A stretch of DNA of 55,517 bases from Macrostomum lignano (GCA_002269645.1 NIVC01003497.1:1-55517), one strand, 5' to 3'; counted from the first letter of the stretch, positions 4,701-52,015 are shown. Notes: generated by a model from the sequence alone, not told the origin. Translations and numbers: made by a program.

Positions 4701-6452
4701 AGCTGTCCAGCAGCCGCACGATGTTAGGATGCCGCAGGCCGGCCAGGATCTCGGCCTCCTTCAGGAAGGCCTCGCGCTGAAGCTGGTCCGCGCCGCCCAG
4801 ATCGACTCGCTTGATCACCACCTGGCGAGGTCCAGCGAGGACAAGGAGGTTGGACTTCTTTTCTAGTGAACTATCGTCTCCGAATATGAACCGCCATGTA
4901 TTGCTCTTAGTGATTGAATTTGCGAAAGTCACTACTGACTGACGCGGCGGAGGAACGGGTTTACAGGTAGACTTGTCACACCTGAGACCATCGGAAGGTA
5001 AAACTTGTCACACCTGAGACCATCGGAAGGTAAAACTTGTCACACCTGAGACCATCGGAAGGTAAAACTTGTCACACCTGAGACCATCGGAAGGTAAAAT
5101 TGTCACACCTGAGACCATTGGAAGGTAAAATTGTCACACCTGAGACCATCGGAAGGTAAAATTGTCACACCTGAGACCATCGGAAGGTAAAATTGTCACA
5201 CCTGAGACCATCGGAAGGTAAAATTGTCACACCTGAGACCATCGAAGGTAAAATTGTCACACCTGAGAAAGGACTGTCACGCCTGAGATTGTAAGGACTG
5301 TCACACCTGAGATTGTAAGGACTGTCACGCATGAGATTGTAAGGACTGTCACGCCTGAGATTGTAAGGACTGTCACGCCTGAGATTGTAAGGAATGTCAC
5401 ACCTGAGATTGTAAGGACTGTCACACCTGAGATTGTAAGGACTGTCACACCTGAGATTGTAAGGACTGTCACACCTGAGATTGTAAGGACTGTCACACCT
5501 AGGATTGTAAGGACTGTCACACCGGAGATTGTAAGGACTGTCACACCTGGATTGTAAGGACTGTCACGCCTGAGATTGTAAGGACTGTCACACATGGGAT
5601 TGTAAGGACTGTCACACCTAGGATTGTAAGGACTGTCACACCTGAGATTGTAAGGACTGTCACACCTAGGATTGTAAGGACTGTCACACCTAGGATTGTA
5701 AGGACTGTCACGCCTGAGATTGTAAGGACTGTCACACCTGAGATTGTAAGGACTGTCACGCCTGAGATTGTAAGGACTGTCACACCTAGGATTGTAAGGA
5801 CTGTCACGCCTGAGATTGTAAGGACTGTCACACCTGAGATTGTAAGGACTGTCACACCTAGGATTGTAAGGACTGTCACACCTGAGATTGTAAGGACTGT
5901 CACACCTAGGATTGTAAGGACTGTCACACCTGAGATTGTAAGGACTGTCACACCTAGGATTGTAAGGACTGTCACACCTGAGATTGTAAGGACTGTCACA
6001 CCTAGGATTGTAAGGACTGTCACACCTGAGATTGTAAGGACTGTCACACCTGGGATTGTAAGGACTGTCACACCTAGGATTGTAAGGACTGTCACACCTG
6101 AGATTGTAAGGACTGTCACACCTGGGATTGTAAGGACTGTCACACCTAGGATTGTAAGGACTGTCACACCTGAGACTACAGTATCAGGATTCCTCAACAT
6201 ACTCGAGACCGCAGTGATGTCTCATTAATGATGGTCAGCTGTGAAGGTCACCACTACAGGCCACTGACAGCCCTTAATTTGTTGTCTGTCCGCCAGCCAG
6301 TCTCAAAAATCACTCCATAGACACACGCGAGCTGCATGGACACACGGACGAACCTTTTCAGGAGTTGAACAGTTTGCCTGGCGCCTCAGGTACAGAGCCA
6401 CCCGGCCAGCGGTGCCCTGGTCCAGGTTCTTCAGGTGCCGATAGTTTTCCAT
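1800..6452 (-). CDS. NEK (NIMA-related) family Ser/Thr protein kinase, multi-exon; 3' end not resolved
   Basis: Exons 6452-6354 (MENYRHLKNLDQGTAGRVALY...EK), 4821-4413 (VVIK, HPNIV, MEYA, HRDLKPDNIL, DFG), 2721-2488 (GTPAYLSPE, SDIWALGCCLYEMC-LRRPF) and 2013-~1800 (YSPLMSDLISKMLKVDPLERPSA). SDIWALGCxLYEM and RPSAxQLL are NEK-typical. There is a one-base phase conflict at the exon 3/4 junction. Confidence 0.85.
2054..2415. repeat. 26-bp minisatellite (GACTAGTGTGACACTGTGCCAGTTCT) in kinase intron 3
   Basis: About 13 near-identical tandem units. Confidence 0.95.
2735..4345. repeat. G-rich ~22-bp minisatellite (GGGGCGATTCTCAGGGCGGGTT) filling kinase intron 2
   Basis: About 1.6 kb of tandem variant units with multiple G-runs. 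Confidence 0.95.
4972..5268. repeat. 31-32-bp minisatellite (TTGTCACACCTGAGACCATCGGAAGGTAAAA) in kinase intron 1
   Basis: About 9 tandem units. Confidence 0.95.
5270..6175. repeat. 24-bp minisatellite (CTGTCACACCTGAGATTGTAAGGA) in kinase intron 1
   Basis: About 37 tandem units; shares the TGTCACACCTGAGA core with the adjacent 31-bp array. Confidence 0.95.
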
Positions 6453-6902: not shown

Positions 6903-9222
6903 TCACTTCTTGCCCCTGCTGAGCTTCTTCACCTCGCCCTCCTGGTTGCCCAGCGCGCCCATCAGCTCGCGCACCTTCCGCTTGCGCTGCGCGTCCGCCC
7001 GCAGCGTCGTCTCCAGCCGCTCGCCGGCCAAGAAGTCGCGGTCGCGGGCCACCTCGCGCACAGCCGCCTTCATCGCCCGTTTGCGCGCCCGCAGCAGGCG
7101 TTTTCGCTCCTCGCCGCCGCTGCTGTCCGACTTTCGCCGGCCGGGGTCGAAATTGGCTTCGACCTGCGGCTCCAGCAGCTCCAGCATGCGGGGCGGCTCG
7201 CGCTCGCGGAGGAGGCGGGCGCCGGTCGCCTCGGCGGAGCAGTCGGCGAATGAGTTGAGGAAGCTGCGCGATGATGAAGAGTTAAGGAGTAATCGATAAT
7301 AGAAAAGTTCTTGATGGATAATTCCTAAATTTAGAATACCTATATAACTTCACAGACAAAACACAGCATTTTATAAATTGACAAGCAGTAGCATTAGCCC
7401 CCAAAGAGGGTCAAGCTGCTAGTCCACTATACAAAATATCCGAGATCAAAATACGAGCAGGCCTTCATGAGACCTGTGAATTTACCTGTCAGCTGCATTC
7501 AGAATCTCGGCCGGCCACAGCCCGCCACCCGCAGCGGCCTTGGCCCGCTCGGCAGCCTCAGCCAGCGGCAGGAAGGCCGCCCGCAGTCCGGCCGACGGCA
7601 GGCCGCCGGTGGCGCCGACGCCGTGCCAGGCGGTGAGCAGCTCGCCAAGGTCGGCGAACACGCGGCCAAGGCAGAGCAGGCGGAGCCCGGCTGCCTGCGA
7701 GCTGGCCAGACCGCTGGCCCGCTGGCACAGGCTGAGCGGCAGCGGTCCCGGCCGCCAGTCCGCTGGGACGGGTCGCGTTGCCAGCAGCAGCTGCTGGCGC
7801 CGGCGACGCGCTGAACTGGCGCCGCTGTCCTCCTCCTGCTCCTCCTCGGTATCCAAGTTCGCGTGAGGAGCTCCGCCACCGTCCCAACGACTGGCGTCAG
7901 CTGGCGAGGCCATGAGCAGGAGGCTGTGCAGACAGGCCAGGAGCTCCGGGCACAGGGGCCAGTGAAGGGCCGACAGAAGGCGCTTCAACGCCGAGACCAG
8001 CAGCAGGATGCGGCAGATCTGAGGATTCGGTGGAGTTGCTTAGGTAAATCGAACAACAAGAAAATTATCCTACAACCGATTTATTAATATCCCAGATGAA
8101 ACAGACACAGTCTACACAAGCTGCTCAGACCTCTTTGAGCCCCGTGGGTCTTCGCCGGACGCAGCAGTCTGCCAGCACCTCGGCGCAGAAGGCCACGCCC
8201 AGCCTGAGGCAGCAGAAGCGGCGCGCTTTGAATCCGCTGAGGTTGCACAGCCGCAGGATGAGGCGCACAGTCTCCAGGTAGGGGGCAGGCGGAGCAGCGA
8301 GCGCGCCAGACGCAGAGTGGCCGTCATCAGCGGCGGCGACTCGCTGACGACGCGCACGGCGCAGTCGATCAAGCTTGCTGCACAGCCCCGCCAGCTGCTC
8401 GCCAGCAGAGCGCCGCTCTGACGGCTTCAACTTTGCCTTGGCAACCGAGCCGCCATTGCCGGTGGGAGCGGCGTCCTTAGCAACCAAACGCTGCGACTGC
8501 ATCAGCTGGTCAGACAGCAGCTTGAAGGCGGACAGCTGATCGCCGGACTCCGGAGCCGCCTTCGTCGAAGTCGGCACCGACATCAGCGGACCCAGCTGGA
8601 ATCGAACCCGAGACTTCCACTCGGCGTCGATGGCGTCGGTGAGGCGGCGCGTCTCCTCCAGCTGCTCGCGCTTCTCGGCGCGATCGGCGCGCGTCTGGGC
8701 GATCAGCGTCTCCATGCGGTCCTTGAGCCCCGTGCCCTTGCGCAGCAGGCCGCCTTCGTCGAACAGCGCCTCGGAAGACATGCGGCCGCGGCCGGCTCCG
8801 GAAGCGTCGTCGTCGTCAAACTCGGCGTCGTCCAGCTCGGTGGCCAGCGGAGCGAACTTGTTGACAGCCGACAGCAGGCCGGAGTCCTCCGCCTCCGACG
8901 GCTGCCGCATCGCCGCCTCAGCTTCCGCCGCCAGAACGCGACGCTTCTGGGCGGCAAAACGGCGCAGCGCCACCTCGGCGGCGGCGTCGGCCACGTCGGC
9001 ATTGCCGTCGCTGCCAGCAGCGCCGAGGCGTCGGTCCAGCAGGCCACCTTTTTTAAAACGCCGGCCCAGTTCGGCGCCCAGCGTGCGGCGCCGTTTGGCC
9101 AGACCGCGGGCGGCGCCGCGGCCCGGGGCGGCGATGGCCTTGGCTGCCTTGGCAACGCCTTTGACGACGGCGGCTGGACGGCCAGCGGTGCCATTTGAAG
9201 CTTTTGCTGCGGACCGCTTCGC
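6903..9222 (-). CDS. NOP14: Nucleolar protein 14 (small-subunit processome component)
   Basis: Exons 9222-8131, 8018-7486 and 7263-6903 with GT-AG boundaries in consistent phase. N-terminal KRRRTLGAEL..LLDRRLG..ALRRFAAQKRR; C-terminal KRAMKAAVREVARDRDFLA...DAQRKRKVRELMGALGNQEGEVKKL matches the NOP14 C-terminus. No in-frame ATG at the first exon (see findings). Confidence 0.88.
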
Positions 9223-9685
9223 CTGGAAGTGGGTGGGAAAGTGAGGACACGGATTCACTCTTGGCCTAGGTACTGTCACTTGCGTCGCCCCAAAGTCGTT
9301 GCAGGTCAGCACAGGTAAGATAGGACTCTAGATCCCGTTGTCTGAGAGATCCCGTTGTTATTGCGACCACAAAACGACTCTGGGGCGATGCAAGTGGACT
9401 CTGGGCGCTTTTAGAATAACTCTGAGGTCGTAGAGTCACGGTAAAATTTTTTAATGGGTGGGCTAGTCTAGCAATCCATTCTAATTCCTTCATCTGATTG
9501 TCTAGCCAGATTAGCGATATATTATACTACTGCAAACAGAAATCGCTGTTGAGATATAAAAAATGCCAAATAAGGTACAAAAAGTTCCAACAGTTGCTAT
9601 CAATTCAATCGGTATCGATCGGAGAGACCGGGAGTACAAATGCACCAAATGGATCTGCTTTATTTAAGACTGAATCGAGCCGCCG

Positions 9686-12609
9686 CTACATATCGGCAGT
9701 AAAGCTGAACTTGATTGGCCCTCTGCCAGCAGCCGGCGCGGCTCCGGCCTTCTTCTTGTCGATTTTCGCCGCCTTCGCCTCGGCGCCGCCCTCCACAGCG
9801 GGGGTGGCAAGGTACAGCTGGTCCGTCAGCCGGCGCTTGCTGACGCCCTCGCTGCTGGAGGCCGTCAGGCCCTTGACCACCCGATCCCCAGCGGCTCGGA
9901 CACTCGACCGGGTCAGCTCGGACACGCCGGAGAGAGGCAGCAGGCCGGCCAGGCGGCTTTTGGCGTACAGCTGGCACAGCAGCCGCCTGCCGCGAAGGTC
10001 GAACACCCGCAGGTGCCGGTCCTCAGACGTTGCGAACAGCAGGCCGGCGTCGATGACCGCGTCCAGGGCCGTGACAGCGCCGGAGCAGCTCGGCTTGAAG
10101 TGGCCCAGCAGCTGCGCGGCGGCCGCGGCTGGCGACTTTGAAGAGGCAGCTGGCGGGCGGCGAAGGTCGAATAAGCCAAGATGGCCCGCTGAATTGCCCG
10201 CCGCGACTGCGGCTGCCGATGCTGCCTCGATGGCGCAGCAGGACTGCAGGATCAGAGGAAAAATTTATCCTAACTGAAGAAATGAAGCCAGCCTCCCACA
10301 TCCTCAGTTGCTGGGCCAGCCTCCCACATCCTCAGTTGCTGGGCAAGCCCCCCAAATCCTCAGGCTGGGCCAGGCTCCCAGATCCTCAGTTGCTGGGCCA
10401 GCCTCCCACATCCTCCTCAGTTGCTGGGCCAGCCTCCCACATCCTCCTCAGTTGCTGGGCCAGCCTCCCACATCCTCCTCAGTTGCTGGGCCAGCCTCCC
10501 ACATCCTCCTCAGTTGCTGGGCCAGCCTCCCAGATCCTCAGTTGCTGGGCCAGCCTCCCACATCCTCAGTTACTGGGCCAGCCTCCCAGATCCCCAGTTG
10601 CTGGGCCAGCCCCTTAAATCCTCAGTTGCTGGGCCAGCCTCCCAGATCCTCAGTTGCTAGCCCAGCCTCCCAGATCCTCAGTTGCTGGGCCAGCCTCTCA
10701 GATCCTACGTTGCTAGCCCAGCCTCCCAGATCCTCAGTTGCTAGCCCAGCCTCCCAGATCCTCAGTTGCTAGCCCAGCCTCCCAGATCCTCAGTTGCTGG
10801 GCCAGCCTCCCAGATCCCCAGTTGCTAGCCCAGCCTCCCAGATCCTCAATTGCTGGGCCAGCCTCCCAGATCCCCAGTTGCTAGCCCAGCCTCCCAGATC
10901 CTCAGTTGCTAGCCCAGCCTCCCAGCCCCAGCTCACCTGAATCGGATACTCGGACCAGGCCAAGTTAACAACAGGCCGCCGCTGCTCGCCAGGCGAGTAG
11001 AGCCGCAGCTCTCGGTGGCCGGTGCACACAGCCAGCAGTTGGCCGCCAGCAATCGGTCTGATGTCGCGCACGTCGACTGGACGGCGAAGGTTCAGCCGGT
11101 CGTTGGGCAGATTCTTGGCCTAGGAAATTTTGGGGGAACAAACAAAGGTTAAAATTGTAGCGGTAGCGTCTAACTTGACAAAAAATGAACCCGAGAATTG
11201 TTTATCTGATTTCATCAGATCCGCATGGATCAAAACCAGCTGCTCACCTGGAACACGCAGGACTCGGCCGCCACATCCCAGACCCGAAGGTCGGACTCGC
11301 GACCGCCGGTAGCCAGACGAGCGTCGCTGTCGCCCCAGGCGCGGACGACGCCAACGTGGCATCCGGCGCGCAGCTGGGCCGCATCGGTGCAGCTGGCAGC
11401 GGAGGCGGCGAAGGAGGCCAGCCTGACGGTGCCGTCCTCGTGACCAACTGCCAGCAAATCTCTCCGCTCGCCGCTGGAATCCGCCGAGGAACAACAGAAG
11501 GTCAGACAGGTCGTGGCGGCGGCTGGGACCTGCGAGATGGATTTGCACGGACTGGCAGTGTGATGGCCTCGCATGTTTGGCTTGTTGTGGCGGTAAATGG
11601 TGCTTAGCTACATGCATGTGCTACCGCCTTGTACATTGTTCCCTGCACAGACTCTGCTTTCACTCTCGTGTGAGGGTTAGGGTTTCGAAATAGGGTAGGG
11701 TTACAGTTCGAGTTTGGGTTGGGTTATGGTTAGAGTTATGGGTTGGGTTATGGTTATGGTTATGGTTAGGGTTATGGTTATGATTAGGGTTATGGTTAGC
11801 GTTATGGTTAGGGTTATGGTTATGGTTAGGGTAATGGTTAGGGTTATGATTAGGGTTATGGTTAGCGTTATGGTTATGATTAGGGTTATGGTTATGGTTA
11901 GGGTTATGGTTAGCGTTATGGTTAGGGTTATGGTTGTGGTTAGGGTAATGGTTAGGGTTATGGTTATGATTATGATTAGGGTTATGGTTAGGGTTATGGT
12001 TATGATTAGGGTTATGGTTATGATTAGGGTTATGGTTATGGTTAGGGTTATGGTTATGGTTATGGTTAGGGCTATGGTTATGGTTAGGGCTATGGTTATG
12101 GTTAGGGCTATGGTTATGGTTATGGTTAGGGTTATGGTTATGGTTAAGGTTAAAATTTTCGGTCATATGACATCAAACCCGAAATCATAAGGCTTAAACC
12201 TCTTTACTGACCGGTTTGAGTTTAAAACGCTTCAGGTCTAGAAACCTAGATGATGTTTTCGATTGCGGAATGCGGAAATGATGGCTAATGCCCTTTCTGA
12301 ACTTACCTCAGCTGGTGACGTCATCTCAGCTGCCGCAGCTTTTTCAGCGCTATCCATCTGTCGAAGGTCGTCGTCCAGGCGTCGCAACAGGCCGGTGGCG
12401 GTGGCGGCGTAGACGCGTGCCGGGCCGCCGCAGTCCGGGCTGGAGGCCAGACCGATCACCGGGTGCCGCTGGCCGAACTCCGCCACGGCCGACAGTCTGG
12501 GAGGCTGGGATGCATCATCAGACACTGCGGAGAATGTGACCGACTTCACGTGCCCGGTGCGGCAGGCCAGAAGAAGCTGCGGCGACTGATGAGGCTCAGG
12601 ATCCGGCAT
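9686..12609 (-). CDS. WDR74: WD repeat protein 74 (Nsa1 homolog, 60S ribosome biogenesis)
   Basis: Exons 12609-12307, 11529-11248, 11119-10937 and 10243-9686, all phase 0 with canonical GT-AG. Motifs ATGGRESDLRVWD, FQAKNLPNDRLNLRRP, AGNSAGHLGLFDLR, EDRHLRVFD, LYAKSRL. Confidence 0.9.
10285..10925. repeat. ~28-bp minisatellite (GCTGGGCCAGCCTCCCAGATCCTCAGTT) in WDR74 intron 3
   Basis: About 20 variant tandem units. Confidence 0.93.
11685..12150. repeat. Telomere-like hexamer array (TTAGGG/TTATGG mix) in WDR74 intron 1
   Basis: Tandem GGTTAT/GGGTTA hexamers with many perfect TTAGGG units. Confidence 0.9.
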
Positions 12610-27970: not shown

Positions 27971-30900
27971 TCAGGGAGGTCTGCCGGTCCTGTCTGTAGC
28001 GTTGTCTTCGGTGGGGAAGACAGAGGCTCGTTTGGTAGCCTGGAGGAACTGGATGAGCCGTGGGATGTTCTCGGGCCGGCAAACGTCGTCCAGGGACGGG
28101 TTGGGCCCGAGGTGGCTGGTCTCGGTTGAAGGCCGGGCAGTAGCAGACGAAGTGCTTGGCATCTTCGTTCTCGAGGCTGCAAAGGGGCAGAGTTCACTCG
28201 GGCGAACACTTCGGAGGAAGCAGTGCCTGGCAAAGCAACCGTGACCTGTGAAGGTCATAGTGAGAGCGCGGATATCTTTTCGATTTTGATTCAAAAGGAT
28301 TCTATGCAGCTTGAGGGATGGATTGGGCACTGCAGCACGGGACTGGCGGCAGTTGAAAATGCCACCCCATATGCGTAAGTGCAGGATGTCCGCCCAGTCA
28401 TTCATCTCACGATTAATGACCGTGGCGGGGATGGGGGCCAGGGGCACGGGGCCAAGGAGCGAGCCAGAACTACCCGCCTTTGCGAGCTCGTTAACTTTGA
28501 ACCCAGCGTGTCCTGGGATCCACGTAAGCCGGGCGGTGTTCCTCCAAGCCAGCTTGTTGAGCTGCCCGATACAGTCACGGACTGTTCGGGAGTTCGTAGT
28601 GGTGTGACACAGGGCCTGCAAAGCGGCTTGGCTGTCAGAGTCGAAGAAGATTCTTCTGTCCTTGAAGTCCCTGCAGTGGAGCTCAGCTGCACAGGAGCTG
28701 ATGGCAAGGACTTCGTTCTGGAAGACGCTAGAGAGTCTGTCAGTGTGTTGGGCGTGAGTAGAGATCACGCGGCCGTTGATAAGGATACAGACTCCAAAGC
28801 CGGATAAACCGTCTTTGGAGGATCCGTCAGTGAAGCAGTGAACCTCCTGAGGGGCCCAGCTGTCGTTGGCGTTCTCCCTGGAGGGGATAGTGACCTTGAA
28901 GCGTTGGTAGAGATTGAGGGAGCGCGGCTCAGCGTCCGAAAGAACAGCCGTACTCCCGCTCTCCTCCAGAACTTTAAGGCACAGGTCAGAGTGCGGCCGG
29001 AGCTTGCGCTTCGCCATCGCTCTTTGTGGCTTGAAGCTAACGCCACCCTCGATTAGCCGGCGGGTGGTTTTAGCAGCCTCGCGACGGACAAAGATGTCCA
29101 GAAGGGGGGGGGGGCAGAGAAAGGCGTTGAGGCCGTCAAAGGGAGCAGAGAGCGGGGCATTCAGAATCATGCGGCACGCGCGTCCCTGCACCTTTTTAAG
29201 GGCTTCGTAGCAAGTTTTAATCTGCAAAGCGCAGGTCCAGATTAGACCGGCGTAAGTAACGGCCGGTCGGACCATTGCGGTGTAGATCCACCAGAGCCGT
29301 TTCGGGGTGAGGCCCCAGGTGGTGCCAACGGCTCTGCGCAGCTGCGCAAGAATCTCGAGGGCTTTTTTGGTTTTGGCCTGAACGTGGGTGGACCAGCTCA
29401 GCCGGTGGTCCAGCGTAACGCCGAGACACTTGGTTTGCTTGCAGGATGGGATTTCCACCCCGTAAAGCTTTAGTGGGCGAATACGCCAGTTGACCCTGCT
29501 GGTGAACATGATCGCGACAGTTTTGGTCTCGGAGAGTCTGAGGCCGCACCTGTCCGCCCATTGTTCAGCAGAGCGAATAAAGTTTTGCAGAAGATCCCTA
29601 AGGGTTTGGGTGACGGTCTGGATGCTACGGCTGTAACATCATCGGCGTAACCGACCTTAAGGATGGGGTCAAGATGGCTGTCCTGAAGGAGCTCATCGAT
29701 GACCATGTTCCAGAGAACTGGAGAAAGGACACCGCCCTGGTGGCCCAGCAGGTGTGCGGTGGCAGTGCGGTGGCTGATCATATACATGATCCACCGGGTG
29801 AGGTGCGAGTGGGTTCCTCTAGCACGTAGAGCTCTGTCGAAAGCCTCAAAGAGGACATTATCGAAGGCTCCAACAATGTCGAGGAAGACAGCGAGAGCGT
29901 AGCCATTACCAAGAACGGCTTTCTCCAGCATGTCGACCAAGACATGAAGCGCACTCTCCGTGGACCGGCCTGCCCGAAAGGCGTGCTGGTTCTCACTGAG
30001 CGGCTTGTTCTTCAGTTCCACAGAGAGGAGGCGCCAGAGCACCAGTCTCTCTAACAGCTTCACCAGTGAGGAGGTGAGGCTGATTGGTCTGAAGGATTTA
30101 ATGGACCGGTAGTCCGGTCGGCCGGGCTTGGGGATAAAAACCACCTTGGCCTCGGTCCAGGGTTTCGGAACAAAGCCGAGAGCAATGCAAGCTTTCAGAA
30201 GCCGGCAAAGGTTCCGCAGGAAACCGGTGCATTTCACCGCCTCTCGCAGGAAAGCTGGCACAATGCCGTCCGGTCCTGGGGATTTGAAGGGTTTGAAGGA
30301 GGAGACTGCTTTAGCAACGCGGTCCTCCGTAATGATTGAGTCAGCCAGTACGTGTCCACCCACTGAATGATCAGGGGGGGGGGTCGGGCCTGGCTGGCTC
30401 GCACGAGAAAAACGCTGTTAGCATCGCCTCCAGCGTTTCTCCTGGGTTCTCAGTGAGCGAGCCGTTGGCTTTCTTTACTGAGGAGAGTTTGGACATTTTG
30501 TCCAGAGTGAGGGCTTTAACGATTCTGGAGGTGGGGCGGGAGCCCTCAAGTTCCTCACAGTATTCGCGCCACTTATTGGTTTTGGCGTTCCTAACCTGCC
30601 TCTTGAACTCGTGGATTGAGTTCAGGTAGGTGGTTTGGTCGGCCGGATTTTTAGTTTTTTGGGCCTACGGTGAAGTCTTTTGGCTCTGCGACGGAGGTCG
30701 CAAGCTGCGGGTTCCACCATGGGGCCGACTGTTTGCCTTTATATGCCTTTAGTGGGCATGAGGCTTCGAAGGCAGCAGTGAGCGAGTCCGTAAGTACGGC
30801 CGCAAATTCATCTGCTTCCTCGCAGGTTTTGATGGAGACTGGAGTGCTAGTGCAACGATAGGTCTCCTCCACGTCAAGCCTGAAGGCGGTCCAATCGGTA

Positions 30901-30975
30901 TTCCTAGCATTCCGTTTCCAGTAAAGCTGGCCTGCGTTTTGGGCGCTGGCCAGCGTGAAGGAGATGAACTTGTGA
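27971..30975 (-). pseudogene. LINE ORF2 (APE remnant, reverse transcriptase, RNase H), frameshifted
   Basis: RT motifs KSPGPDGI, FRPISLTS, QHAFRAGRST, FLDIVGAFD, QGGVLSPVLW, YADD; RNase H FTDGS, VFQNEVLAI, DSQAAL, WIPGH; frameshifts near 30700, 30370 and 29600. Confidence 0.92.
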
Positions 30976-32319
30976 TCAGAGAGGGACGCTAGATCTGATC
31001 TCTAGAGAGGATCTGATCTCTGTGATCAGAGAGTAATCCCACCAGTTGGAAGGCTGAGCCATGCCGTCGTCCAGTTCCCTCAGCTGGCTTTCAGTGTTTT
31101 TGCGAGCGGCACTAGTCCGCTCGAGGCGAAGTCTCAGAGACTGAGCTTCGTCAAGTGCGCGCTGGATTAGCCCGGACCGCCGGTTACTGCGGGCGGGTCT
31201 ACGCCCGCGCGAGGCGGACTCAGCAGCGCGAGTCTTGTTAGGCTTGTTAGGCTCGGGATCGGGTTGCTGCTGCCGTTTGGCCGGCGGAGCCTGAGCCCCA
31301 GCTCCGGGAGCGGCGCGCTTCCCGTCGTTCTTGGTCTCCACCTTGCCCTCCTCACAGCGGAGGATGATCAGTTGATGGAGACCAAGGTGGAGGTTTGAGC
31401 CATGCGTTAGCCGCTTGGCCCATCCCTCCGTCAGGCCGAGGATGACGGTGGCCCCGGTCGTGCCCTTGCGGACCGTGTTGTGGTACACAAGACCACTGAC
31501 GTCGAGATCCGGGTGCCGCTTGAGCAGGAGCTGCCGCAGCTGCTCCCCGGACTTGATTGCACTGTCGGCCGGGACCCAAATCATATGGCGGATGGTCTTC
31601 GGCCGCTCGCTCTCCAGGGCGAAGGTCAGCTGGCCCAGGTCGCTGTGCCAGTCGAACTTGGGCAGTTGATCTCGCAGGAGCTGGGTGCTCTCCTCGGATT
31701 TGCACCACAGTAGGCTGCACCCGTTCGCCTTGGTGGACTTGATGATGTCCACGAAGACGCCCTCCAGGGTTAGGTTTAGCAAGCCCTCGTCGATGGTACG
31801 CCACGCGACGTCGAGCTGCTCGGGCGTCAGGTCGAAATCCCCGCCGAGGATCATCATGGCGGGTTGCAGCGGCTGCTTGACCTTGGAGGCGTAGGATTCG
31901 GAGGTCTTGAGCGGGGCCGCTTTGTCCTTGGAAAGCGGTAGGCCGGCAGGATTGCCCCCCTGAGAGTCCGAGGACACGGCGGTTCCTGACGGCCCAGCAG
32001 TGCCACCGGACTCTCCAGAGGGCCTCCCCGCTGCGGTGGCTTCCGAAGGCCTCACCGCGGCTTGCCCGCCCTCCGCGGACGCAGCAGCAGCCCGCTTCTC
32101 CTGCCGCTTACGGTTGCGGCGGATATTTCGCTGCCGTCGGGACTCGGCCGTGCGCGGTCGGCTAGCCTGGCGGCCAGGGTGCTCGACGGCAGCGTCAGCT
32201 GGCCCTGTTGGACCAGGTTGGGCGTTGGTGCTACCAGTGGTAGCTACCGGAGCGGCTGATCCCGGTGAGCCAGAGGCGACCGGGTCAGTTTCTTTTGAGA
32301 TGGTGGCGTTAGTGGCCAT
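30976..32319 (-). CDS. LINE ORF1 protein (447 aa)
   Basis: Open frame from ATG 32319 immediately upstream of ORF2; low-complexity N-terminus and structured central region. Confidence 0.75.
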   Translation of the reverse strand: MATNATISKETDPVASGSPGSAAPVATTGSTNAQPGPTGPADAAVEHPGRQASRPRTAESRRQRNIRRNRKRQEKRAAAASAEGGQAAVRPSEATAAGRPSGESGGTAGPSGTAVSSDSQGGNPAGLPLSKDKAAPLKTSESYASKVKQPLQPAMMILGGDFDLTPEQLDVAWRTIDEGLLNLTLEGVFVDIIKSTKANGCSLLWCKSEESTQLLRDQLPKFDWHSDLGQLTFALESERPKTIRHMIWVPADSAIKSGEQLRQLLLKRHPDLDVSGLVYHNTVRKGTTGATVILGLTEGWAKRLTHGSNLHLGLHQLIILRCEEGKVETKNDGKRAAPGAGAQAPPAKRQQQPDPEPNKPNKTRAAESASRGRRPARSNRRSGLIQRALDEAQSLRLRLERTSAARKNTESQLRELDDGMAQPSNWWDYSLITEIRSSLEIRSSVPL

Positions 32320-32804
32320 AGCTGAAAGCGGGGGAGGGCTACTCGTTACGCGAGTTGAGTAACCCGACTGGCCGACACCTCAAGCCAACCGGTTTGAAAA
32401 AAGGACCGCTAGCGACCGGACTACTCCCCGGCCTTCCAGCCCATCGGCACGGTCAAACACCTTAGGCATTAGAGGGTACGTTAAGCAGTACCACGGCCTG
32501 CAGGCTGGCAAGCCAGACCCGCATGCCCAAATTCGGCCGAAGCCACTGGATGGGTCCCCAGCGCCGGAGCCCAGTCTGTCCAGCAGCCCTAGGGTCTGCC
32601 TTGAACACACGCGGGGACGGGTACCCCTCGTTCGACTTGCGCGACAGCGTGGGGGTCTGCGGCTGCCAGAGGCAAATAGAGGGTGCAGACCTTCCACCAG
32701 CCTTGACCTGCTGAAGATAGGGGCAGGCGTAAAGCATCGCAGACCTTAGCCCATGGGCCTAGTCTGTCTCATACTTCACTGGCATGCTGAATACGCCTTC
32801 GCGT

Positions 32805-36825: not shown

Positions 36826-38157
36826 GTGGAAACTATTTTTTTTTATTAACTATAAGTTCCGGCAAGCAGAACCGGATCGATCGACAGGTTTTATCAACCG
36901 AGATGACAAAATGACTGGAATTCATTAGGATTCCAAGTACATGTAAATATGTTTGATTGCCACATTTGCTTCGTTGAAACTAATATGATTGGTGGATGAC
37001 GAAATGACTCTCTTCAGGTAGTGCCTGCTAATTAAGATGACGAAGTGACCCTAGTCGAGGTGGGGTGATGCACCACCCCAGATGACGAAATGGCAGACGA
37101 CGAAATGACTAGGAACTGCGAAAATCGAGATGTACGTTTCCATGTCAACAATTTGTACATGTAAATATAATCTGACGTCCTACTCTACATGACATGAGAT
37201 TTAAGTACACTTAAGCACCTATTATTAAGGTCCACATCAGCCATTAGCAAGACAAGCAAGAGGCAGCATCAAACGTTAAAAATTAGCCTTCAGCGATTGA
37301 ACAGGTAAACTAACTACCAAGGAACTATGGAAAGGCTTTATAAGTTTATAATGCAAATTAACTGGCCCAAATTACCGCAAAATTGGCCTACTCGTATTGA
37401 ATTCAAAAGGTGAACTGCTGTCCATGCTCAAATGCTTCTGAGTTTTTAACTAGCTCTCGTGACCAGATTGAGCACGAAATGGCCCAGACAGAACGCAAAG
37501 AGACATCAAAGAGACTGGTCTTGACGAACAGCTCCAAGATCTGATTCATGGCATTCATGTTGCTGCATAAGAAACGAGCGCGAGCTGTTTTATTTGCATG
37601 GACCAGTCAAAAATAATGTGAATTACATGCAGTTTCGCGGGAAAGAGATATGCCAAAATTAATTAGTTTTTAATACCAAATCAAGCAAGCAGCTAAAAAG
37701 AAGAGAGAAAATTGTAAAATTTTAGATACATTGTGAACGACGCAAACTGCAGCTGCAGGCAAAAAAATGCATCTGAAATTCGCCCGAGAGAGACCGGCAA
37801 TTGCGAAGCTGCCGCCCAGCCTCAGGCACTCACCGGTTATCTCACTGGTATTTAGCCTCAGGCGAGCGAGCATTATTGTGTTGTTACTCTCGCGTTTGAG
37901 AGTAAGTTGCCCAATGGAGAATAAAAATTTGACCAGGTTTAGTGCAAGCACAATGGCAAAAAACTCAGACTCACAGACAAGCTCAAACCCCGCCACAGTG
38001 ACCACCCCACACTCTCGGTTCCATAAAAGCCGCTCGCCCCCTCGAGCACCTGCTTTTTTCGCTGCTGCATCATCTCATTTTCGTCTGCCAGACTGCTGAG
38101 AGCTTAAGAGCCGAGCTTCGAAGGTCCAAGTCCGAAGAGGGAAGGTAGAGCACCAAC

Positions 38158-41100
38158 ATGTCTTCTGCAAACGAAACCAAGACCGTGAAGACGGTGAAGA
38201 CCATCACCTCCACCAGCGGCGGTCAGGCCGGCACCACCAGCGGCGGCTCCGTCACCTCCCGCTCTGAGAGCAGCAGCGGTAGCTTCACAAAACGTGGCCC
38301 AATCACCGCGTCAAAGACCGTCGTTATCAACAGGTCGCTGCCTGGCAGCTTGTCTGTGCAGACGAGGGACAGCGTTGACTCCGCCGTGCGAGTGCAGCGA
38401 AGCTACACCGCCGCCTCTAGCGAGCTGCAGCAGACAACAGCCGGGCTTAACAACATGCTGACGGGACGGGAGAAGGAGAAGAAGGACATGCGGGAGCTGA
38501 ACGAACGATTTGCCAGCTACATCGAGAAGGTAGGCAATAAGTGCTTTCCGTTCCGCATATCTCCAGCATGCACGTGCTCGCATGGACGGGGACTAATTTT
38601 TAAATCTGACATTTCTTATAGGTTCGCTTCTTGGAGGCCCAGAACCGCAAGCTGTCGGAGGAGCTCCAGAAGCTGCGCGACTCCTGGGGCAAGGAGACGG
38701 AGAAGGTGAGGTCCCTATACGAGACTGAGCTGGCCCAGCTGCGCAAGCTGCTGGAAGACGCGGATCAGTACAAGGCGACCATGGAGGTTCGCGTCACCAC
38801 TCTTGAGGATCAGCTGAACGAGATGGAGCAGCTGTGAGTTCAAAAAGACTTTCAACCCTTTCTCAAGTATGGACATGTCAAGGTGTAGTCGATATTAGGG
38901 CTTATGTTAAAATAACGCTTACAGATATACTCCATCAACTTTAGTACGAGTGCAGGATATATTCCATAAGGTATTCCACAAGGTAACCCATCGCACTTTC
39001 AGGCTGGAAGAGGCCAACCGCGTGCACGCTAACGACCGGGACACCATCGACAAGCTCAACCAGCAGATGGCTGACTACGACGGCGAGATCTCGCTGTTGC
39101 GCAGGCGCGTCGCTTCATTCGACGACGAGCGGGCGCGCGACCAGGCCGAGATCAAGCGGCTGAGGCAGGATGTGGCCCGGCTCAGAGGCGTGAGTTTCAT
39201 CGGGGTTGCCTGTGGCTTTGATTTGCACGGGTGTGATCCTACTTTGCGGGAAGCTCAAATCAGTCGATACTAGAGAAGAATTATTTTATAAATGTTTATT
39301 TCGCTTGGTAGAGGTCTCTGCAAACAAAGCAGTATGATGTACCCTATGTAGCAATATGTATCTGCATTGGTGACTCTAGAAGGTTCTCTAGCACTGTTCT
39401 CAAGCCCTAATAAAGCTTTTGCGAGACGCATGATTCAGCACTTTGCCGCGGGGTGAAAAGCGCTTGCGACAGCGAATAAACATAGGTAGGCTAATTGTAG
39501 CAACAATTGCAACCCATTGTCCAACTCTATTTGGGGGCTACTAGATGCTTCTTGCCAAGTCACGTCCCCTAAGACTGCGGCGGCGCCAACAAGAGCGGGT
39601 GCCTGAGGCCCTGGCTGGAGCATGGCAATCGCTTTAAACTCGTGCGGCAGAGAACATCAATAGAATGAAAGCCAGCTTGCAACTCAAACAGTCCCAACAA
39701 AAATATGGCGCCAGGGGCAATATTCTCCATCTCAGCCAGCGACTCGGGCAGCCGTAGATAACAAAGCACTTGATGAAAAATGCAAATTTGTGTTGAATTG
39801 AATAGCAGCAGTGGAAGAAAAAGCGAGAGAACGCAACTGCGCAGTCTTGCGCTCATGACTAGGCTGGGTGGGGCTACCTTCTCACAATTAAAAATGCAGC
39901 TTCAGTCCATTGTGAGTCCCCTACTGGCATAAAATGAAATTTGAAAAGAATAGGAACTTTATTGTCCAGCTCTAACCCACGATGACCCCCTCAAGACATC
40001 GCATGTCCATGCTACCTTGGGCATTGTTGCACCCTACCCATATTTTTCATTCTCCAAACAGCAGACAAACACAACCGTAGAACTGCAAAACAGGGCGTTG
40101 ACCGCTTATTCAGGTCATGGAGCCGAGCGAAAGAAGTTTCTTAGTGGACAAATTTGGTGATGCCTTGGCGCTTGGTCTCTGACAGTCTGGTCTGGGTGCT
40201 TTGAATGTGTAGCGCATGTGTGTTGTGTATCGTAAGGCACAATAAAAAACGTGTTCGCTGAGTCATGCAGAACTGAGTTATTGTCAGTATCTTCTACAGT
40301 AAGTGAGTGCGCTTCATTCAAACACGGTTTTTGCAGTTCGAACCAAATATTATGTTAGGACAAAATATGACTTCCTTTCTCATCCAAATGTAAACTAGAA
40401 TACGAAATACCTTCGTTAAATAGGATTGCTAAAGGCTTTATCTTCTTTCACGTTTCTTCTAACTTATAGATTTCATAACAAATGGCAAAATATTTACGTA
40501 TAATTAGGAATTCTGCGCCCCCGTTCGCAGGACCTGGACACGGAGACGCTGAACCACATCAACGCCGAGAATTCTGCCCAGTCACTGCGCGAGGAGCTTG
40601 AATTCCTTCGTGCTCTGCATGATTCTGTAAGTGAACTGTGTACTTTGTTACCAAACGGCTAGTAGGTTGAATCGGACATATAATTTAAATTTCATTTCTG
40701 CAGGAGCTCAAAGAACTTTCAGCCCTGGCCTATCGTGACACAACCTCGGAAAACCGCGAGTTCTGGAAGAACGAAATGGCCCAGGCTCTGCACGAAATCC
40801 AGCGCGAATACGATTCCAAGCTGGACGTTGTCCGAAGCGAGATGGAGTCTCAGTACAGCATCAAGGTGCAGGAGGCTCGCACGAGCAACACGCGTGACAA
40901 CATGGAGCTAACCCACCTCAAGGAGGAGAACCGGCGCATCAAGTCCCAGGTGCGTACGGCGGCGTCGCTCCGCTTAATACATTAATGCTAAAATGCGCGA
41001 GAATTGTACGCTTTTCCTCTGAAATTTTCCATTCGATCAGATCGGAGACGCTCGCAACCGGATCCCGGAGCTGGAGGCGCGCAACGCACAGCTGGAGCGC

Positions 41101-41562
41101 GAAATCGAAGATCTGCGCCGCGAGCTGGAGGAGACGATGCGCTCAAGCGAGCTGGAGAAGAACCAGCTGCAGGCCGACCTGTCCAGCTGCAACGCCACCT
41201 TGGCTGAGTACCTGCGCGAGCTGCAGACACTGATGGACGCCAAGCTCAGCTTGGAGCTCGAGATCCACGCCTACAGAAAGCTGCTCGAGGGAGAGGAGAT
41301 CAGGTTAGGGGCCAGAAACTGATTAATAACTTTCCGAACAAACTACGAGCATTCAACCGGTCGTCACAAGTCATCCAGAGTTTTGTCTCGCCAGTAAAAA
41401 AGCGAGAGGAGATCCCATTCGTCTAATGTGCTAATATGTTATTCAGCCCGATACCCTCAACCGCTGCAGGATCAACCAGACCAGCATCAGCAGCCGCGAG
41501 GGATCCTCGTCAAGGACCACCACCGTCATCGAGCAGCAGACCTCCTCCAGTTCTGAGATGTC

Positions 41563-41596
<34 letters not shown>

Positions 41597-43027
41597 ATTT
41601 CTCAGCAGCAAGGTTGGCACATCCATTAATGTGCAAATATTTATGCAGCAGAAATTGTATTAAATAACTAAAACAAATTGTACATTCAATATCTCCCTAC
41701 AACTCCCCTTCCAGCTCGTCAGCAGGGTAAGCTCACTTCTCAACCTTACTCGATACGCCATGGCTCTATTCCTTAAAAACTCAACTGCCCACCCCTCCGA
41801 TTGTAGTGAGCATCATGAAGGGCTCGATGACCGCCAAGACTTCGGCCCAGCGGACCTCGAAGGGCAGCATCACCATCCAGGAATGCGATAGCGAGGGCAA
41901 GTTCGTAACTCTGGAGTTCACCGGCAAGAAGGTTTGTCTATTTACTAATATTCTCTAGGTGTAACTCTGACTTGAAATTTCCCTAAAATAGCACCTCATC
42001 TGGTCTCTTACAGAAGGAGGATCTGAGCGACTGGACCCTGGTGCGAAACGTCGACAACGAGAAGCTCATCGTGAAATACACCTTCCCGAAGGACACCGTC
42101 ATGGATAGCGGAAACAAGACCATTAAGGTAAACCTACCGGGAAAAGCTTCATGAAGCTAGCAAAGGTGGACACAAACTACTAGCAGTAGTCGTGACACGT
42201 GAACGTCTCTACTCTGAATTTTCCGCAGATCTGGGCCAAGGGCCAAAGGCCTGCCGACAGCAAGGATCTGGAGATGAACGACCAGAGCTGGGGCATGGGC
42301 TCCCACATCGTCACGATGCTGTCCAACGCTGATGGAGAGGTAAACTGCGAAAACTCATGTCGGTCGCTATGCATACCCCTCTCTGCGTCAGTCTCTCCCA
42401 CAACCCCTCTCTGCGTCAGTCTCTCCCACAACCTCTCTCTGCGTCAGTCTCTCCCACAACCTCTCTCTGCGTCAGTCTCTCCCACAACCCCTCTCTGCGT
42501 CAGTCTCTCCCACACTGCCTACCCCTCTCTGCGTCAGTCTCTCCCACAACCTCTCTCTGCGTCAGTCTCTCCCACAACCCCTCTCTGCGTCAGTCTCTCC
42601 CACAACCTCTCTCTGCGTCAGTCTCTCCCACAACCTCTCTCTGCGTCAGTCTCTCCCACAACCCCTCACTGCGTCAGTCTCTCCCACAACCTCTCTCTGC
42701 GTCAGTCTCTCCCACAACCTCTCTCTGCGTCAGTCTCTCCCACAACCCCTCTCTGCGTCAGTCTCTCCCACAACCCCTCACTGCGTCAGTCTCTCCCACA
42801 ACCCCTCTCTGCGTCAGTCTCTCCCACAACCCCTCACTGCATTAGTCTCTCCCACACTGCCTACCCCTCACTGCGTCAGTCTCTCCCACACTGCCTACCC
42901 CTCTCTGCCTCAGTCTAATTTCCAACCCACAATACCTTAAGCATCTCTTTGAACCAAGCCAACCCAACCATCGCTACAACAGGAAAAGGCCACCCACACC
43001 CAGAAGACAACCTACAGCACTGAGTAA
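38158..43027 (+). CDS. Cytoplasmic intermediate filament protein of protostome type (long coil 1b, lamin-tail domain, no CaaX)
   Basis: Exons 38158-38529, 38622-38833, 39003-39189, 40531-40626, 40704-40949, 41041-41303, 41470-41612, 41715-41726, 41807-41931, 42014-42127, 42229-42339 and 42983-43027, phases consistent. Motifs LNERFASYIEKVRFLE, KLSLELEIHAYRKLLEGEE, LTD (SKGSITIQECDSEGKF..., WTLVR, IWA); ends TYSTE*. Confidence 0.95.
42370..42915. repeat. ~28-bp minisatellite (CTCTCTGCGTCAGTCTCTCCCACAACC) in the last IF intron
   Basis: About 19 variant tandem units. Confidence 0.94.
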
Positions 43028-50640: not shown

Positions 50641-50804
50641 GTGAGTTCAGCAGTTGTAGATTAGACAAGCAATCTACGCCCCCGCTGGGGAGCAAACGAA
50701 GAGTGCAATAAAAATTTTTAAACAAACTACACGTAGCTTCTGACCTCAGCCATTATATCTCAGCAAATTCCCCCAAGCCTTGACATCTTAGCAATTCTTG
50801 GCTA

Positions 50805-52015
50805 AATTAGCAATCCATTCTATTCCTGCACCCATGATAGGCTAGATTAGCAATCCATTCTATTCCTGCATCCATGATAGGCTAGATTAGCAATCCATTC
50901 TATTCCTGCATCCATGATTGACTAGATTAGCAATCCATTCTATTCCTGCATCCATGATAGGCTAGATTAGCAATCCATTCTATTCCTGCATCCATGATAG
51001 GCTAGATTAGCAATCCATTCTATTCCTGCATCCATGATTGACTAGATTAGCAATCCATTCTATTCCTGCATCCATGATTGACTAGATTAGCAATCCATTC
51101 TATTCCTGCATCCTTAATAGGCTAGATTAGCAATCCATTCTATTCCTGCATCCATGACTGGCTAGATTAGCAATCCATTCTATTCCTGCATCCATGATTG
51201 GCTAGATTAGCAATCCATTCTATTCCTGCATCCATGACTGGCTAGATTAGCAATCCATTCTATTCCTGCATCCATGATTGGCTAGATTAGCAATCCATTC
51301 TATTCCTGCATCCATGATTGGCTAGATTAGCAATCCATTCTATTCCTGCATCCATGACTGGCTAGATTAGCAATCCATTCTATTCCTGCATCCATGATAG
51401 GCTAGATTAGCAATCCATTATTTTCCTGCATCCATGATTGGCTAGATTAGCAATCCATTCTATTCCTGCATCCATGATAGGCTAGATTAGCAATCCATTC
51501 TATTCCTGCATCCATGATAGGCTAGATTAGCAATCCATTCTATTCCTGCATCCATGATAGGCTAGATTAGCAATCCATTCTATTCCTGCATCCATGATTG
51601 ACTAGATTAGCAATCCATTCTATTCCTGCATCCATGATAGGCTAGATTAGCAATCCATTCTATTCCTGCATCCATGATAGGCTAGATTAGCAATCCATTC
51701 TATTCCTGCATCCATGATAGGCTAGATTAGCAATCCATTCTATTCCTGCATCCATGATTGACTAGATTAGCAATCCATTCTATTCCTGCATCCATGATAG
51801 GCTAGATTAGCAATCCATTCTATTCCTGCATCCATGATTGGCTAGATTAGCAATCCATTCTATTCCTGCATCCATGACTGGCTAGATTAGCAATCCATTC
51901 TATTCCTGCATCCTTAATAGGCTAGATCAGCAATCCATTATTTTCCTGCATCCATGATTGGCTAGATTAGCAATCCATTCTATTCCTACATCCTAAATTG
52001 GATAGATCAGCAATC
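50805..52015. repeat. 40-bp satellite (GCTAGATTAGCAATCCATTCTATTCCTGCATCCATGATAG)
   Basis: About 30 highly similar tandem units. Confidence 0.97.

What the first reader, a model, noticed from the sequence alone, without database searches (positions are those of the whole stretch)
9205..9245. NOP14 has no start codon of its own; its frame opens exactly at a 3' splice site, as expected if a spliced leader donates the AUG
Seen: on the minus strand a clean acceptor TTTCCCACCCACTTCCAG is followed directly by GCG AAG CGG TCC..., the NOP14 frame. The first ATG after the acceptor is out of frame, and no convincing ATG-bearing exon lies between here and the WDR74 poly(A) signal. Established: flatworm spliced leaders end in a conserved AUG that can serve as the initiator methionine. 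Inference: SL-AUG + GCG AAG gives M-A-K-R-S-A-A-K, resembling the MAK- start of animal NOP14. An essential ribosome-biogenesis gene would then be translatable only after trans-splicing.
Basis: partly seen in the sequence, partly recalled or inferred. Interest (0 to 1): 0.78.

Follow-up and report, generated by a model that had tools for sequence, protein, structure and literature searches.

The report
NOP14 start codon supplied by spliced leader
In the flatworm Macrostomum lignano the ribosome-assembly gene NOP14 has no start codon of its own and almost certainly borrows the AUG at the end of the trans-spliced leader, which is a well-known flatworm mechanism and so an ordinary, though clean, example.

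Summary
On the minus strand the acceptor tttcccacccacttccAG (AG at 9224-9223) is followed at 9222 by GCG AAG CGG, the NOP14 frame. No usable cis ATG lies upstream, and the first ATG downstream (9194) is out of frame.

The window is Macrostomum lignano contig NIVC01003497.1 (assembly Mlig_3_7). GenBank annotates this gene (BOX15_Mlig003916g4) and two other copies as 5'-partial CDSs. These begin 0-3 nt after this AG, and exactly at it in the diverged copy.

WDR74 and NOP14 share one transcriptional-unit name. In that annotation such units were cut into genes using spliced-leader (SL) read peaks and poly(A) ends.

The M. lignano SL ends in ...TTGCATG, so SL plus exon reads M-A-K-R-S-A-A-K, a typical animal NOP14 N-terminus.

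Between the two diverged copies, coding constraint starts at codon 1. The intergenic region, including the only candidate ATG exon, evolves freely, is repeat-derived and has no GTRAG donor.

I could not reach an SL-junction read, so trans-splicing at 9222 is strongly inferred, not shown. Use of the SL AUG as initiator has been known in flatworms since 2006. This is a new member of a known kind, of low to moderate interest.

The parts
9223..9240 (-). Polypyrimidine tract plus AG (9224-9223): the inferred SL trans-splice acceptor. TTCCAG fits [T/C]TNCAG.
   Evidence: One search gives the sequence. The motif is from PMC8629364. It is conserved in the other copies apart from one C>T change at 9233.
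9241..9245 (-). Possible branch point CTCAC, with the A at 9242, 20 nt before the exon. Inferred only.
   Evidence: the match to YTNAY rests on general knowledge.
8131..9222 (-). NOP14 exon 1: 364 codons, starts AKRSAAK, contains no initiator ATG.
   Evidence: It matches PAA51138.1 and PAA90971.1.
8019..8130 (-). NOP14 intron 1 (gtctga...cctcag, 112 nt).
   Evidence: The spliced model equals the GenBank proteins.
7486..8018 (-). NOP14 exon 2.
7264..7485 (-). NOP14 intron 2 (gtaaat...gcgcag, 222 nt).
6903..7263 (-). NOP14 exon 3, through stop codon TGA 6905-6903.
   Evidence: The annotated CDS ends at 6903.
9223..9685 (-). Outron / intercistronic spacer between the WDR74 stop and the NOP14 acceptor (463 nt). 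It has no GTRAG donor, is repeat-rich and tolerates indels.
9659..9664 (-). AATAAA poly(A) signal of WDR74.
9686..12609 (-). WDR74/Nsa1 gene (ATG 12609-12607 to TAG 9688-9686), the upstream gene of the same transcriptional unit.
   Evidence: The best solved-structure match is human WDR74, E=5.8e-23.
9192..9194 (-). First cis ATG after the acceptor. It is out of frame and opens a 163-codon ORF.
9461..9534 (-). Degenerate copy (about 77% identity) of the 40-bp minisatellite at 50798-52016. It holds the only two intergenic ATGs (9493, 9479).
9328..9330 (-). In-frame TAG that closes the NOP14 frame upstream of the acceptor.
9275..9399 (.). Imperfect inverted repeat / long hairpin inside the outron (arms 9277-9300 and 9373-9396).

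Best explanation
WDR74 and NOP14 of Macrostomum lignano are transcribed as one precursor, a two-gene operon.

The precursor is cleaved and polyadenylated after the WDR74 AATAAA signal (9664-9659). The 35-nt spliced leader is then trans-spliced onto the acceptor at 9223/9222, and the 463-nt outron is discarded.

The leader's last three bases, AUG, land directly in front of GCG AAG CGG and act as the initiator. This gives a 662-residue NOP14 that begins M-A-K-R-S-A-A-K. Without the leader, the first AUG a scanning ribosome meets (9194) is out of frame.

Shown:
- The gene structure and the lack of a cis ATG.
- The organism and its SL sequence.
- Annotation boundaries at the AG.
- Coding constraint from codon 1.

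Inferred:
- SL reads really join at 9222.
- Ribosomes really start at the SL AUG.
For: (1) Identity. The window is NIVC01003497.1 of M. lignano Mlig_3_7. NOP14 is PAA51138.1 (BOX15_Mlig003916g4, 'partial') and WDR74 is PAA51139.1 (Mlig003916g3).

(2) 5'-partial CDS starts.
- In the diverged copy L002 the CDS starts at the first base after the AG, and the protein begins AKRSAAK.
- In L003 it starts 2 nt after the AG, in a shifted frame.
- In the window it starts at 9219.

(3) Annotation method. Wudarski et al. 2017 (PMC5730564) state that transcriptional units were cut into genes at SL-read peaks and T-fill poly(A) sites. Genes of one unit share the name prefix, as in the example Mlig030697.g1/.g2. 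WDR74 and NOP14 share the prefix Mlig003916, and Mlig025845 in the other copy.

(4) The leader. The M. lignano SL ends in ATG, the trans-acceptor motif is [T/C]TNCAG, and the operon spacing rule is under 1 kb (PMC8629364). Here the acceptor is TTCCAG and the spacer is 463 nt.

(5) No cis start. There is no in-frame ATG before codon 105, no ATG in the 35-codon upstream extension, and no GTRAG donor in the outron.

(6) Window versus L002.
- Exon 1 has 21 differing codons, 16 synonymous and 5 not.
- The first five differences (codons 1, 3, 19, 21, 22) are all synonymous.
- The spacer has 6.3% substitutions plus 214 gap columns.
- The candidate upstream exon has 9.3% substitutions.

(7) N-terminus. 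SL plus exon translates to MAKRSAAKASNG. This aligns with the MAKKKK/MGKKKK N-termini of other NOP14s.

(8) A distant orthologue. Its cDNA contig (L001, Logan SRR26183987) starts TGCAATTCATTGCATG|C ATG AAG. That is an SL-like 3' end (13 of 16 bases match the M. lignano SL), joined 1 nt before the orthologue's own ATG. NOP14 is therefore trans-spliced at its start in a relative too.

(9) Ab initio models. UniProt models built on the older assembly could not start NOP14. They fused it to WDR74 through bridge exons that differ between copies.

(10) Precedent. The SL AUG serves as initiator in S. mansoni (Cheng 2006, cited). It is regarded as the likely start codon in Macrostomum (PMC10468722).
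Against: - No read, cDNA or peptide spanning SL|GCGAAG could be retrieved.
- The 'partial' flag alone is not diagnostic. The WDR74 CDSs are also flagged partial although they have an ATG.
- The window's own CDS is annotated from 9219, not 9222. This is probably a clipped 5' mismatch, GCG versus GCA, between the copies.
- The SL AUG has U at position -3, a weak context, and an out-of-frame AUG follows 28 nt downstream.
- In the rival upstream exon, 4 of the 5 substitutions between the copies are synonymous (nominal p about 0.02, post hoc). One older gene model splices that exon's donor (9439) to 9222.
Confidence: 0.8

Rival explanations
1. A cis-spliced first exon supplies the start. ATG 9493 (MKELEWIARLAHPLKNFT) would be spliced from the donor acc|GTGACT at 9439 onto 9222, from a promoter in the spacer.
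For: - The ORF is phase-compatible.
- The donor and the ORF are kept in copy L002, with 4 of 5 substitutions synonymous.
- The UniProt model A0A1I8HAC7 (P0001) uses this donor-acceptor pair.
Against: - The ATG lies in a copy of a 40-bp minisatellite.
- GC3 is 0.33 against 0.81 for genes here, and the codon log-odds is -1.08 per codon.
- Divergence is 9.3%, against 1.9% in exon 1 and 6.3% in the spacer.
- The donor is GTGAC, not GT[GA]AG.
- L002 carries a 193-nt insertion right at the donor.
- The other copy's ab initio model uses a different bridge exon, so these look like predictor artefacts.
- The evidence-based annotation starts at the AG.
Confidence: 0.07
2. The leader is added, but at the next AG (gcgaag|CGG, exon start 9216). 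This is also in frame and gives M-R-S-A-A-K. Alternatively both sites are used.
For: The AG at 9218-9217 is in phase 0.
Against: It has no pyrimidine tract of its own. The annotated start in L002 is at the upstream AG. Codon 1 changes synonymously between the copies.
Confidence: 0.05
3. Initiation occurs without the leader, either at an internal AUG (codon 105) or at a near-cognate codon in the 35-codon upstream extension of an untrans-spliced mRNA.
For: GTG, CTG and ACG codons exist in frame in 9327-9223.
Against: - Codons 1-104 are coding: 8 synonymous changes against 1 non-synonymous, and the Pfam match begins at residue 26.
- The upstream extension has a negative coding score (-0.56 per codon).
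- That extension contains the splice signals.
Confidence: 0.04
4. Artefact or pseudogene: the true ATG was lost through a PacBio indel, or this copy is dead.
For: The assembly does contain such errors. Copy L003 differs from the window by a 1-nt deletion in a C4 run (9128), which frameshifts its annotated N-terminus.
Against: Two independently assembled copies about 2% diverged (window and L002) share the same ATG-less structure with no gaps over the first 180 nt. The substitution pattern shows purifying selection.
Confidence: 0.03

Closest known systems
Schistosoma mansoni mRNAs that need the SL 3'-terminal AUG as initiator (Cheng, Cohen, Ndegwa & Davis 2006, J Biol Chem 281:733; as summarised in PMC9851317 and PMC12582326)
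   Same: The flatworm SL ends in AUG. The acceptor is placed so that the AUG is in frame, and there is no cis start codon. In that work more than 40 cDNAs required the SL AUG.
   Different: The species is different (a free-living macrostomorph) and so is the SL sequence. Here the gene is the downstream member of an operon. No experimental translation data exist for this case.
M. lignano SL trans-splicing and operons (Wudarski et al. 2017, PMC5730564; Ustyantsev & Berezikov 2021, PMC8629364)
   Same: Same organism and assembly. The acceptor motif, the under-1-kb repeat-inflated spacer and the shared transcriptional-unit naming all fit their description.
   Different: In the text I read and term-searched, neither paper mentions the SL AUG as a start codon or this gene pair. 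The GenBank record simply leaves the CDS 5'-partial.
slORFs: ORFs created by SL addition (slORFfinder, PMC9851317)
   Same: The start codon is donated by the leader.
   Different: Most of the slORFs reported there are alternative or extended ORFs initiated at NUG codons in nematodes, Oikopleura and trypanosomes. Here the SL AUG would initiate the main conserved protein.
Caenorhabditis elegans SL2-type operons
   Same: A downstream cistron is released by 3' end formation plus trans-splicing.
   Different: C. elegans uses a specialised SL2 with about 100-nt spacers, and its leader supplies no 3'-terminal AUG (own knowledge). M. lignano has one SL and long spacers filled with repeats.

Membership tests
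Flatworm mRNA initiated at the SL 3'-terminal AUG | The organism has an SL RNA whose leader ends in AUG. | tested here: met
   The window was identified as M. lignano. The SL CGGTCTCTTACTGCGAAGACTCAATTTATTGCATG is published (PMC8629364; PMC5173321). No SL gene lies in the window itself.
Flatworm mRNA initiated at the SL 3'-terminal AUG | A 3' splice acceptor that is not matched by an upstream cis donor (an outron). | tested here: met
   The acceptor is TTCCAG|G. There is no GT[AG]AG in 9690-9223.
Flatworm mRNA initiated at the SL 3'-terminal AUG | SL-bearing transcripts are joined at that acceptor. | tested here: inconclusive
   Support is indirect only. The annotated 5'-partial CDS starts at the AG in three copies, under a pipeline that cut genes at SL peaks. 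No junction read could be retrieved.
Flatworm mRNA initiated at the SL 3'-terminal AUG | The conserved ORF is in frame with the SL AUG and has no cis AUG that could encode the conserved N-terminus. | tested here: met
Flatworm mRNA initiated at the SL 3'-terminal AUG | Translation actually starts at the SL AUG. | not testable with these tools
   This needs ribosome profiling, N-terminal proteomics or a reporter.
M. lignano operon (criteria of Ustyantsev & Berezikov 2021) | Adjacent same-strand genes less than 1 kb apart (repeat-adjusted), with the downstream gene SL trans-spliced. | tested here: inconclusive
   Strand and spacing are met: 463 nt from the stop to the acceptor, and the genes share a transcriptional-unit name. 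Trans-splicing of the downstream gene is inferred, not seen.
NOP14 (Pfam PF04147) | Scores above the curated cut-off on the N- and C-terminal parts of the family profile. | tested here: met
   46.4 and 66.1 bits against a cut-off of 34.9. It also matches Chaetomium Utp2/Nop14. The middle of the profile (positions 210-767) is not matched, and the protein is short (662 aa), like orthologue P0004 (606 aa).

The most novel reading that the evidence does not exclude
The start codon of an essential ribosome-biogenesis gene has moved from the gene to the leader during macrostomorph evolution. A distant relative still has its own AUG 1 nt after the splice junction (L001). NOP14 synthesis in M. lignano would then depend strictly on trans-splicing. 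Together with the WDR74-NOP14 operon, which pairs a 60S factor with a 40S factor, this would let SL or TMG-cap-dependent translational control set ribosome production, for example in neoblasts.
Probability: 0.25. Interest if true: 0.45.

Novelty: new member of a known kind. Interest (0 to 1): 0.25.

Why it matters
The case is a clean, checkable example of a conserved, presumably essential protein that can only be made after trans-splicing.

It explains why GenBank lists this protein as 'partial' and why UniProt carries artificial WDR74-NOP14(-kinase) fusion proteins. It also shows that annotation pipelines for flatworms should add the leader's ATG back before calling ORFs.

It adds nothing new in mechanism.

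Tried and rejected
- **Word-indexed protein searches.** Three searches found nothing, not even the window's own protein: exon 1, the C-terminus, and an SL-encoded peptide plus the N-terminus.
- **Exact look-ups.** EMC4 and P0001 were not found as encoded genes. M+NOP14 for two copies was not in the collection.
- **SL RNA gene in the window.** None found: no TTATTGCATG and no ATGGTRAG followed by an Sm site. Rfam gave no hits for the window or the spacer.
- **SL|exon junction scan of metagenome contigs.** No match.
- **Paper supplements.** Those of PMC5816591 and PMC5730564 do not list Mlig003916, Mlig025845 or the NOP14 gene.
- **My idea that the downstream NEK-like kinase also lacks an ATG.** This was wrong. 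Its first exon, MENYRHLKNLDQGTAGR, with its own ATG, lies in window 6464-6306, upstream of a minisatellite-filled intron.
- **My first codon test.** It used wrong frames for exons 2 and 3 and was redone.
- **Strand-specific conservation of the outron hairpin.** I rejected this because the antisense strand folds at least as well.

Full report
**1. What is in the sequence**

On the minus strand, 9240-9223 reads tttcccacccacttccag. Position 9222 opens GCG AAG CGG TCC GCA GCA AAA GCT.

The frame runs 364 codons to a phase-0 donor, gag|gtctga (8131/8130). Two further exons (8018-7486 and 7263-6903) complete a 661-codon ORF.

Pfam Nop14 matches exon 1 (residues 26-204 to profile positions 27-209, E=2.4e-12). 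It also matches the last exon (profile positions 768-862, E=2.7e-18).

Upstream, the frame is closed by TAG 9330-9328 with no ATG in between. Only three ATGs lie between the WDR74 stop (TAG 9688-9686) and the acceptor:
- 9691, the last codon of WDR74.
- 9493, the ORF MKELEW..., in another frame.
- 9479, MDC*.

The first ATG after the acceptor is at 9194-9192 and is out of frame. The first in-frame ATG is codon 105.

**2. Which organism and which gene**

Two word-indexed protein searches found nothing. The exhaustive search found one near-identical protein, P0001, at 99% identity. In it the query occupies residues 451-814 of 1111.

Its cluster members identify everything. The species is Macrostomum lignano. 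The 55,517-bp contig carries PAA51138.1 (BOX15_Mlig003916g4, partial, 660 aa; NOP14) and PAA51139.1 (Mlig003916g3, partial; WDR74).

Looking up PAA51138.1 returned NIVC01003497.1 of GCA_002269645.1. That is the window, with the NOP14 CDS at 9219-6903 and the WDR74 CDS at 12603-9686.

The upstream gene is WDR74/Nsa1. Its best solved-structure relative is human WDR74, E=5.8e-23.

**3. What the public annotation says about the 5' end**

Two further genomic copies were fetched: L002 (NIVC01000099.1, genes Mlig025845g2/g3) and L003 (NIVC01003129.1, genes Mlig003916g1/g2).

- In L002 the annotated 5'-partial CDS begins at the very first base after ...ccacttccag, and the protein starts AKRSAAK.
- In L003 it begins 2 nt after the AG, in another frame. 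That copy has a 1-nt deletion in a C4 run, at window position 9128.
- In the window it begins at 9219. My inference is that the first codon differs between the copies (GCG versus GCA) and was clipped when a transcript was mapped.

Wudarski et al. 2017 describe how these boundaries arose. SL-containing reads were trimmed and mapped. Transcriptional units, often polycistronic precursors, were then cut into genes at SL peaks and T-fill poly(A) sites by their TBONE pipeline, and ORFs were called with TransDecoder (PMC5730564). Genes from one unit share a name prefix, as in their example Mlig030697.g1/.g2.

WDR74 and NOP14 share a prefix in every copy. So the published annotation treats them as one transcriptional unit, with the NOP14 boundary exactly at this acceptor. 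Because the leader, ATG included, was trimmed, the CDS was left 5'-partial.

The 'partial' flag is not proof on its own. The WDR74 CDSs are also flagged partial even though an ATG is present.

**4. The leader**

M. lignano has a single 35-nt leader, CGGTCTCTTACTGCGAAGACTCAATTTATTGCATG. About 30% of its genes are trans-spliced. The enriched motif at trans-splice acceptors is [T/C]TNCAG. Adjacent genes under 1 kb apart (repeat-adjusted) with a trans-spliced downstream member are classed as operons (PMC8629364).

Here the acceptor is TTCCAG and the spacer is 463 nt. Joining leader and exon gives ...UUGCAUG|GCGAAG, which translates to MAKRSAAKASNG.

All reported flatworm leaders end in ATG (PMC12582326). 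In S. mansoni more than 40 cDNAs need that AUG for initiation (Cheng et al. 2006, as summarised in PMC9851317). Wiberg et al. 2023 treat the Macrostomum SL ATG as a likely start codon (PMC10468722).

**5. Is there a hidden cis start?**

- The spacer has no GT[AG]AG donor.
- The only candidate exon is ATG 9493 to the donor acc|GTGACT at 9439. It sits in a 74-nt segment that is about 77% identical to the 40-bp minisatellite at 50798-52016.
- That exon has GC3 0.33 against 0.81 in local genes, and a codon log-odds of -1.08 per codon against +0.98 for the first 60 NOP14 codons.

Comparing the window with L002:
- Exon 1 has 21 differing codons, 16 synonymous and 5 not. By codon position the differences are 5, 0 and 16.
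- The first five differences (codons 1, 3, 19, 21, 22) are all synonymous.
- The spacer shows 6.3% substitutions plus 214 gap columns, including a 193-nt insertion at the candidate donor.
- The candidate exon shows 9.3% substitutions.

Constraint therefore begins at 9222 and not before.

One point in the rival's favour is that 4 of its 5 substitutions are synonymous. This is a nominal, post hoc signal that I regard as chance.

The UniProt models from the older assembly fuse WDR74 to NOP14 through bridge exons that differ between copies:
- ILAHPLKNVT in A0A1I8HAC7.
- IPILPVLTCNDFGATQ in A0A1I8JCN7 and A0A1I8HEF2; the latter model also runs on into the downstream kinase.

This is what an ab initio predictor does when a gene has no start codon.

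**6. Comparative support**

Other animal NOP14 proteins from the search begin MAKKKK, MGKKKK or MVKK. The reconstructed MAKRS aligns with them.

The only other short-form orthologue is P0004, at 34% identity. It comes from a cDNA contig, L001, from Logan run SRR26183987, and an Illumina adapter at its 3' end confirms it is cDNA.

Its 5' end reads TGCAATTCATTGCATG|C ATG AAG CCT. Thirteen of those 16 bases match the 3' end of the M. lignano leader, and the gene's own in-frame ATG follows 1 nt later. So NOP14 is trans-spliced right at its start codon in a distant relative of unknown species. In M. lignano the gene's own ATG is gone.

**7. Mechanism and confidence**

The most likely course of events is as follows:
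1. A WDR74-NOP14 precursor is made.
2. Its 3' end forms after the AATAAA signal at 9664-9659.
3. The leader is trans-spliced at 9222.
4. Translation initiates at the leader's AUG.

I put this at 0.8. Neither the SL junction nor the initiation event was seen directly, because all routes to M. lignano transcript data failed.

The rivals and their weights:
- An upstream cis exon, 0.07.
- Use of the next in-frame AG at 9218-9217, 0.05.
- Leaderless non-AUG or internal initiation, 0.04.
- An assembly artefact or pseudogene, 0.03.

**8. Novelty**

The mechanism has been established since 2006. The organism's trans-splicing and operons are published, and the public annotation already places the gene boundary at this site.

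What is new is only the explicit reading that this particular conserved gene depends on the leader's AUG. That makes it a new member of a known kind, of modest interest.

Noticed in passing
window 9275-9399: A long imperfect inverted repeat lies in the outron, 55 nt upstream of the acceptor, with 24-nt arms that are 92% complementary. As sense-strand RNA it folds at -62.2 kcal/mol (z=-6.0). It is retained in copy L002 (-74.3 kcal/mol) despite a 15-nt loop insertion. The antisense strand folds equally well. No other copy exists in the window and there is no Rfam match. It could be a foldback or MITE-like element, or a structured RNA.
   Followed up: partly
L003 (NIVC01003129.1), equivalent to window 9128: This near-identical duplicate contig differs from the window's NOP14 gene by only two changes: a 1-nt deletion in a CCCC run and a 1-nt intron insertion. 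The deletion makes GenBank protein PAA53126.1 start with a frameshifted EAVRSKSFKWHRW.... It is probably a long-read homopolymer error.
   Followed up: partly
UniProt A0A1I8HAC7, A0A1I8JCN7, A0A1I8HEF2 (P0001, P0028, P0027): Gene models from the older M. lignano assembly fuse WDR74+NOP14, and in one case also the downstream NEK/RCC1 kinase, into single proteins of 1111-1374 aa through invented micro-exons. These are operon-induced annotation artefacts.
   Followed up: yes
window 4965-6175: The first intron of the downstream NEK-like kinase is filled by two minisatellite arrays, with 31-bp and 24-bp units. The kinase's first exon, with its own ATG (MENYRHLKNLDQGTAGR), lies within 6464-6306, about 450 nt after the NOP14 stop on the same strand. 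Whether it belongs to the same transcriptional unit is unknown.
   Followed up: partly
window 11696-12152: A telomere-like degenerate array (GGTTAGGGTTAT units, about 38 copies of a 12-mer) sits inside a WDR74 intron. In all, tandem-repeat finding returned 32 rows (some overlapping) across the window, and many of the arrays lie in introns and spacers.
   Followed up: no
window 27971-32379 (-): Retroelement ORFs: a reverse transcriptase (PF00078, E=5.9e-26), an RNase H domain, and an upstream 467-codon ORF rich in basic and low-complexity sequence.
   Followed up: no
window 38149-41955 (+): A multi-exon intermediate-filament gene with coil 1A and 2B motifs (LNERFASYIEKV, YRKLLEGEE) and what looks to me like a lamin-tail-like exon.
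   Followed up: no
L001 1-20: In the distant orthologue's mRNA, the leader's AUG and the gene's own AUG overlap out of frame (GCATGCATG). The leader AUG would open a 5-codon uORF (MHEAS*) across the real start.
   Followed up: no
window 9623-9630 (-): The spacer contains CGGTCTCT, identical to the first 8 nt of the M. lignano leader, about 30 nt after the WDR74 poly(A) signal. It is probably a coincidence.
   Followed up: no
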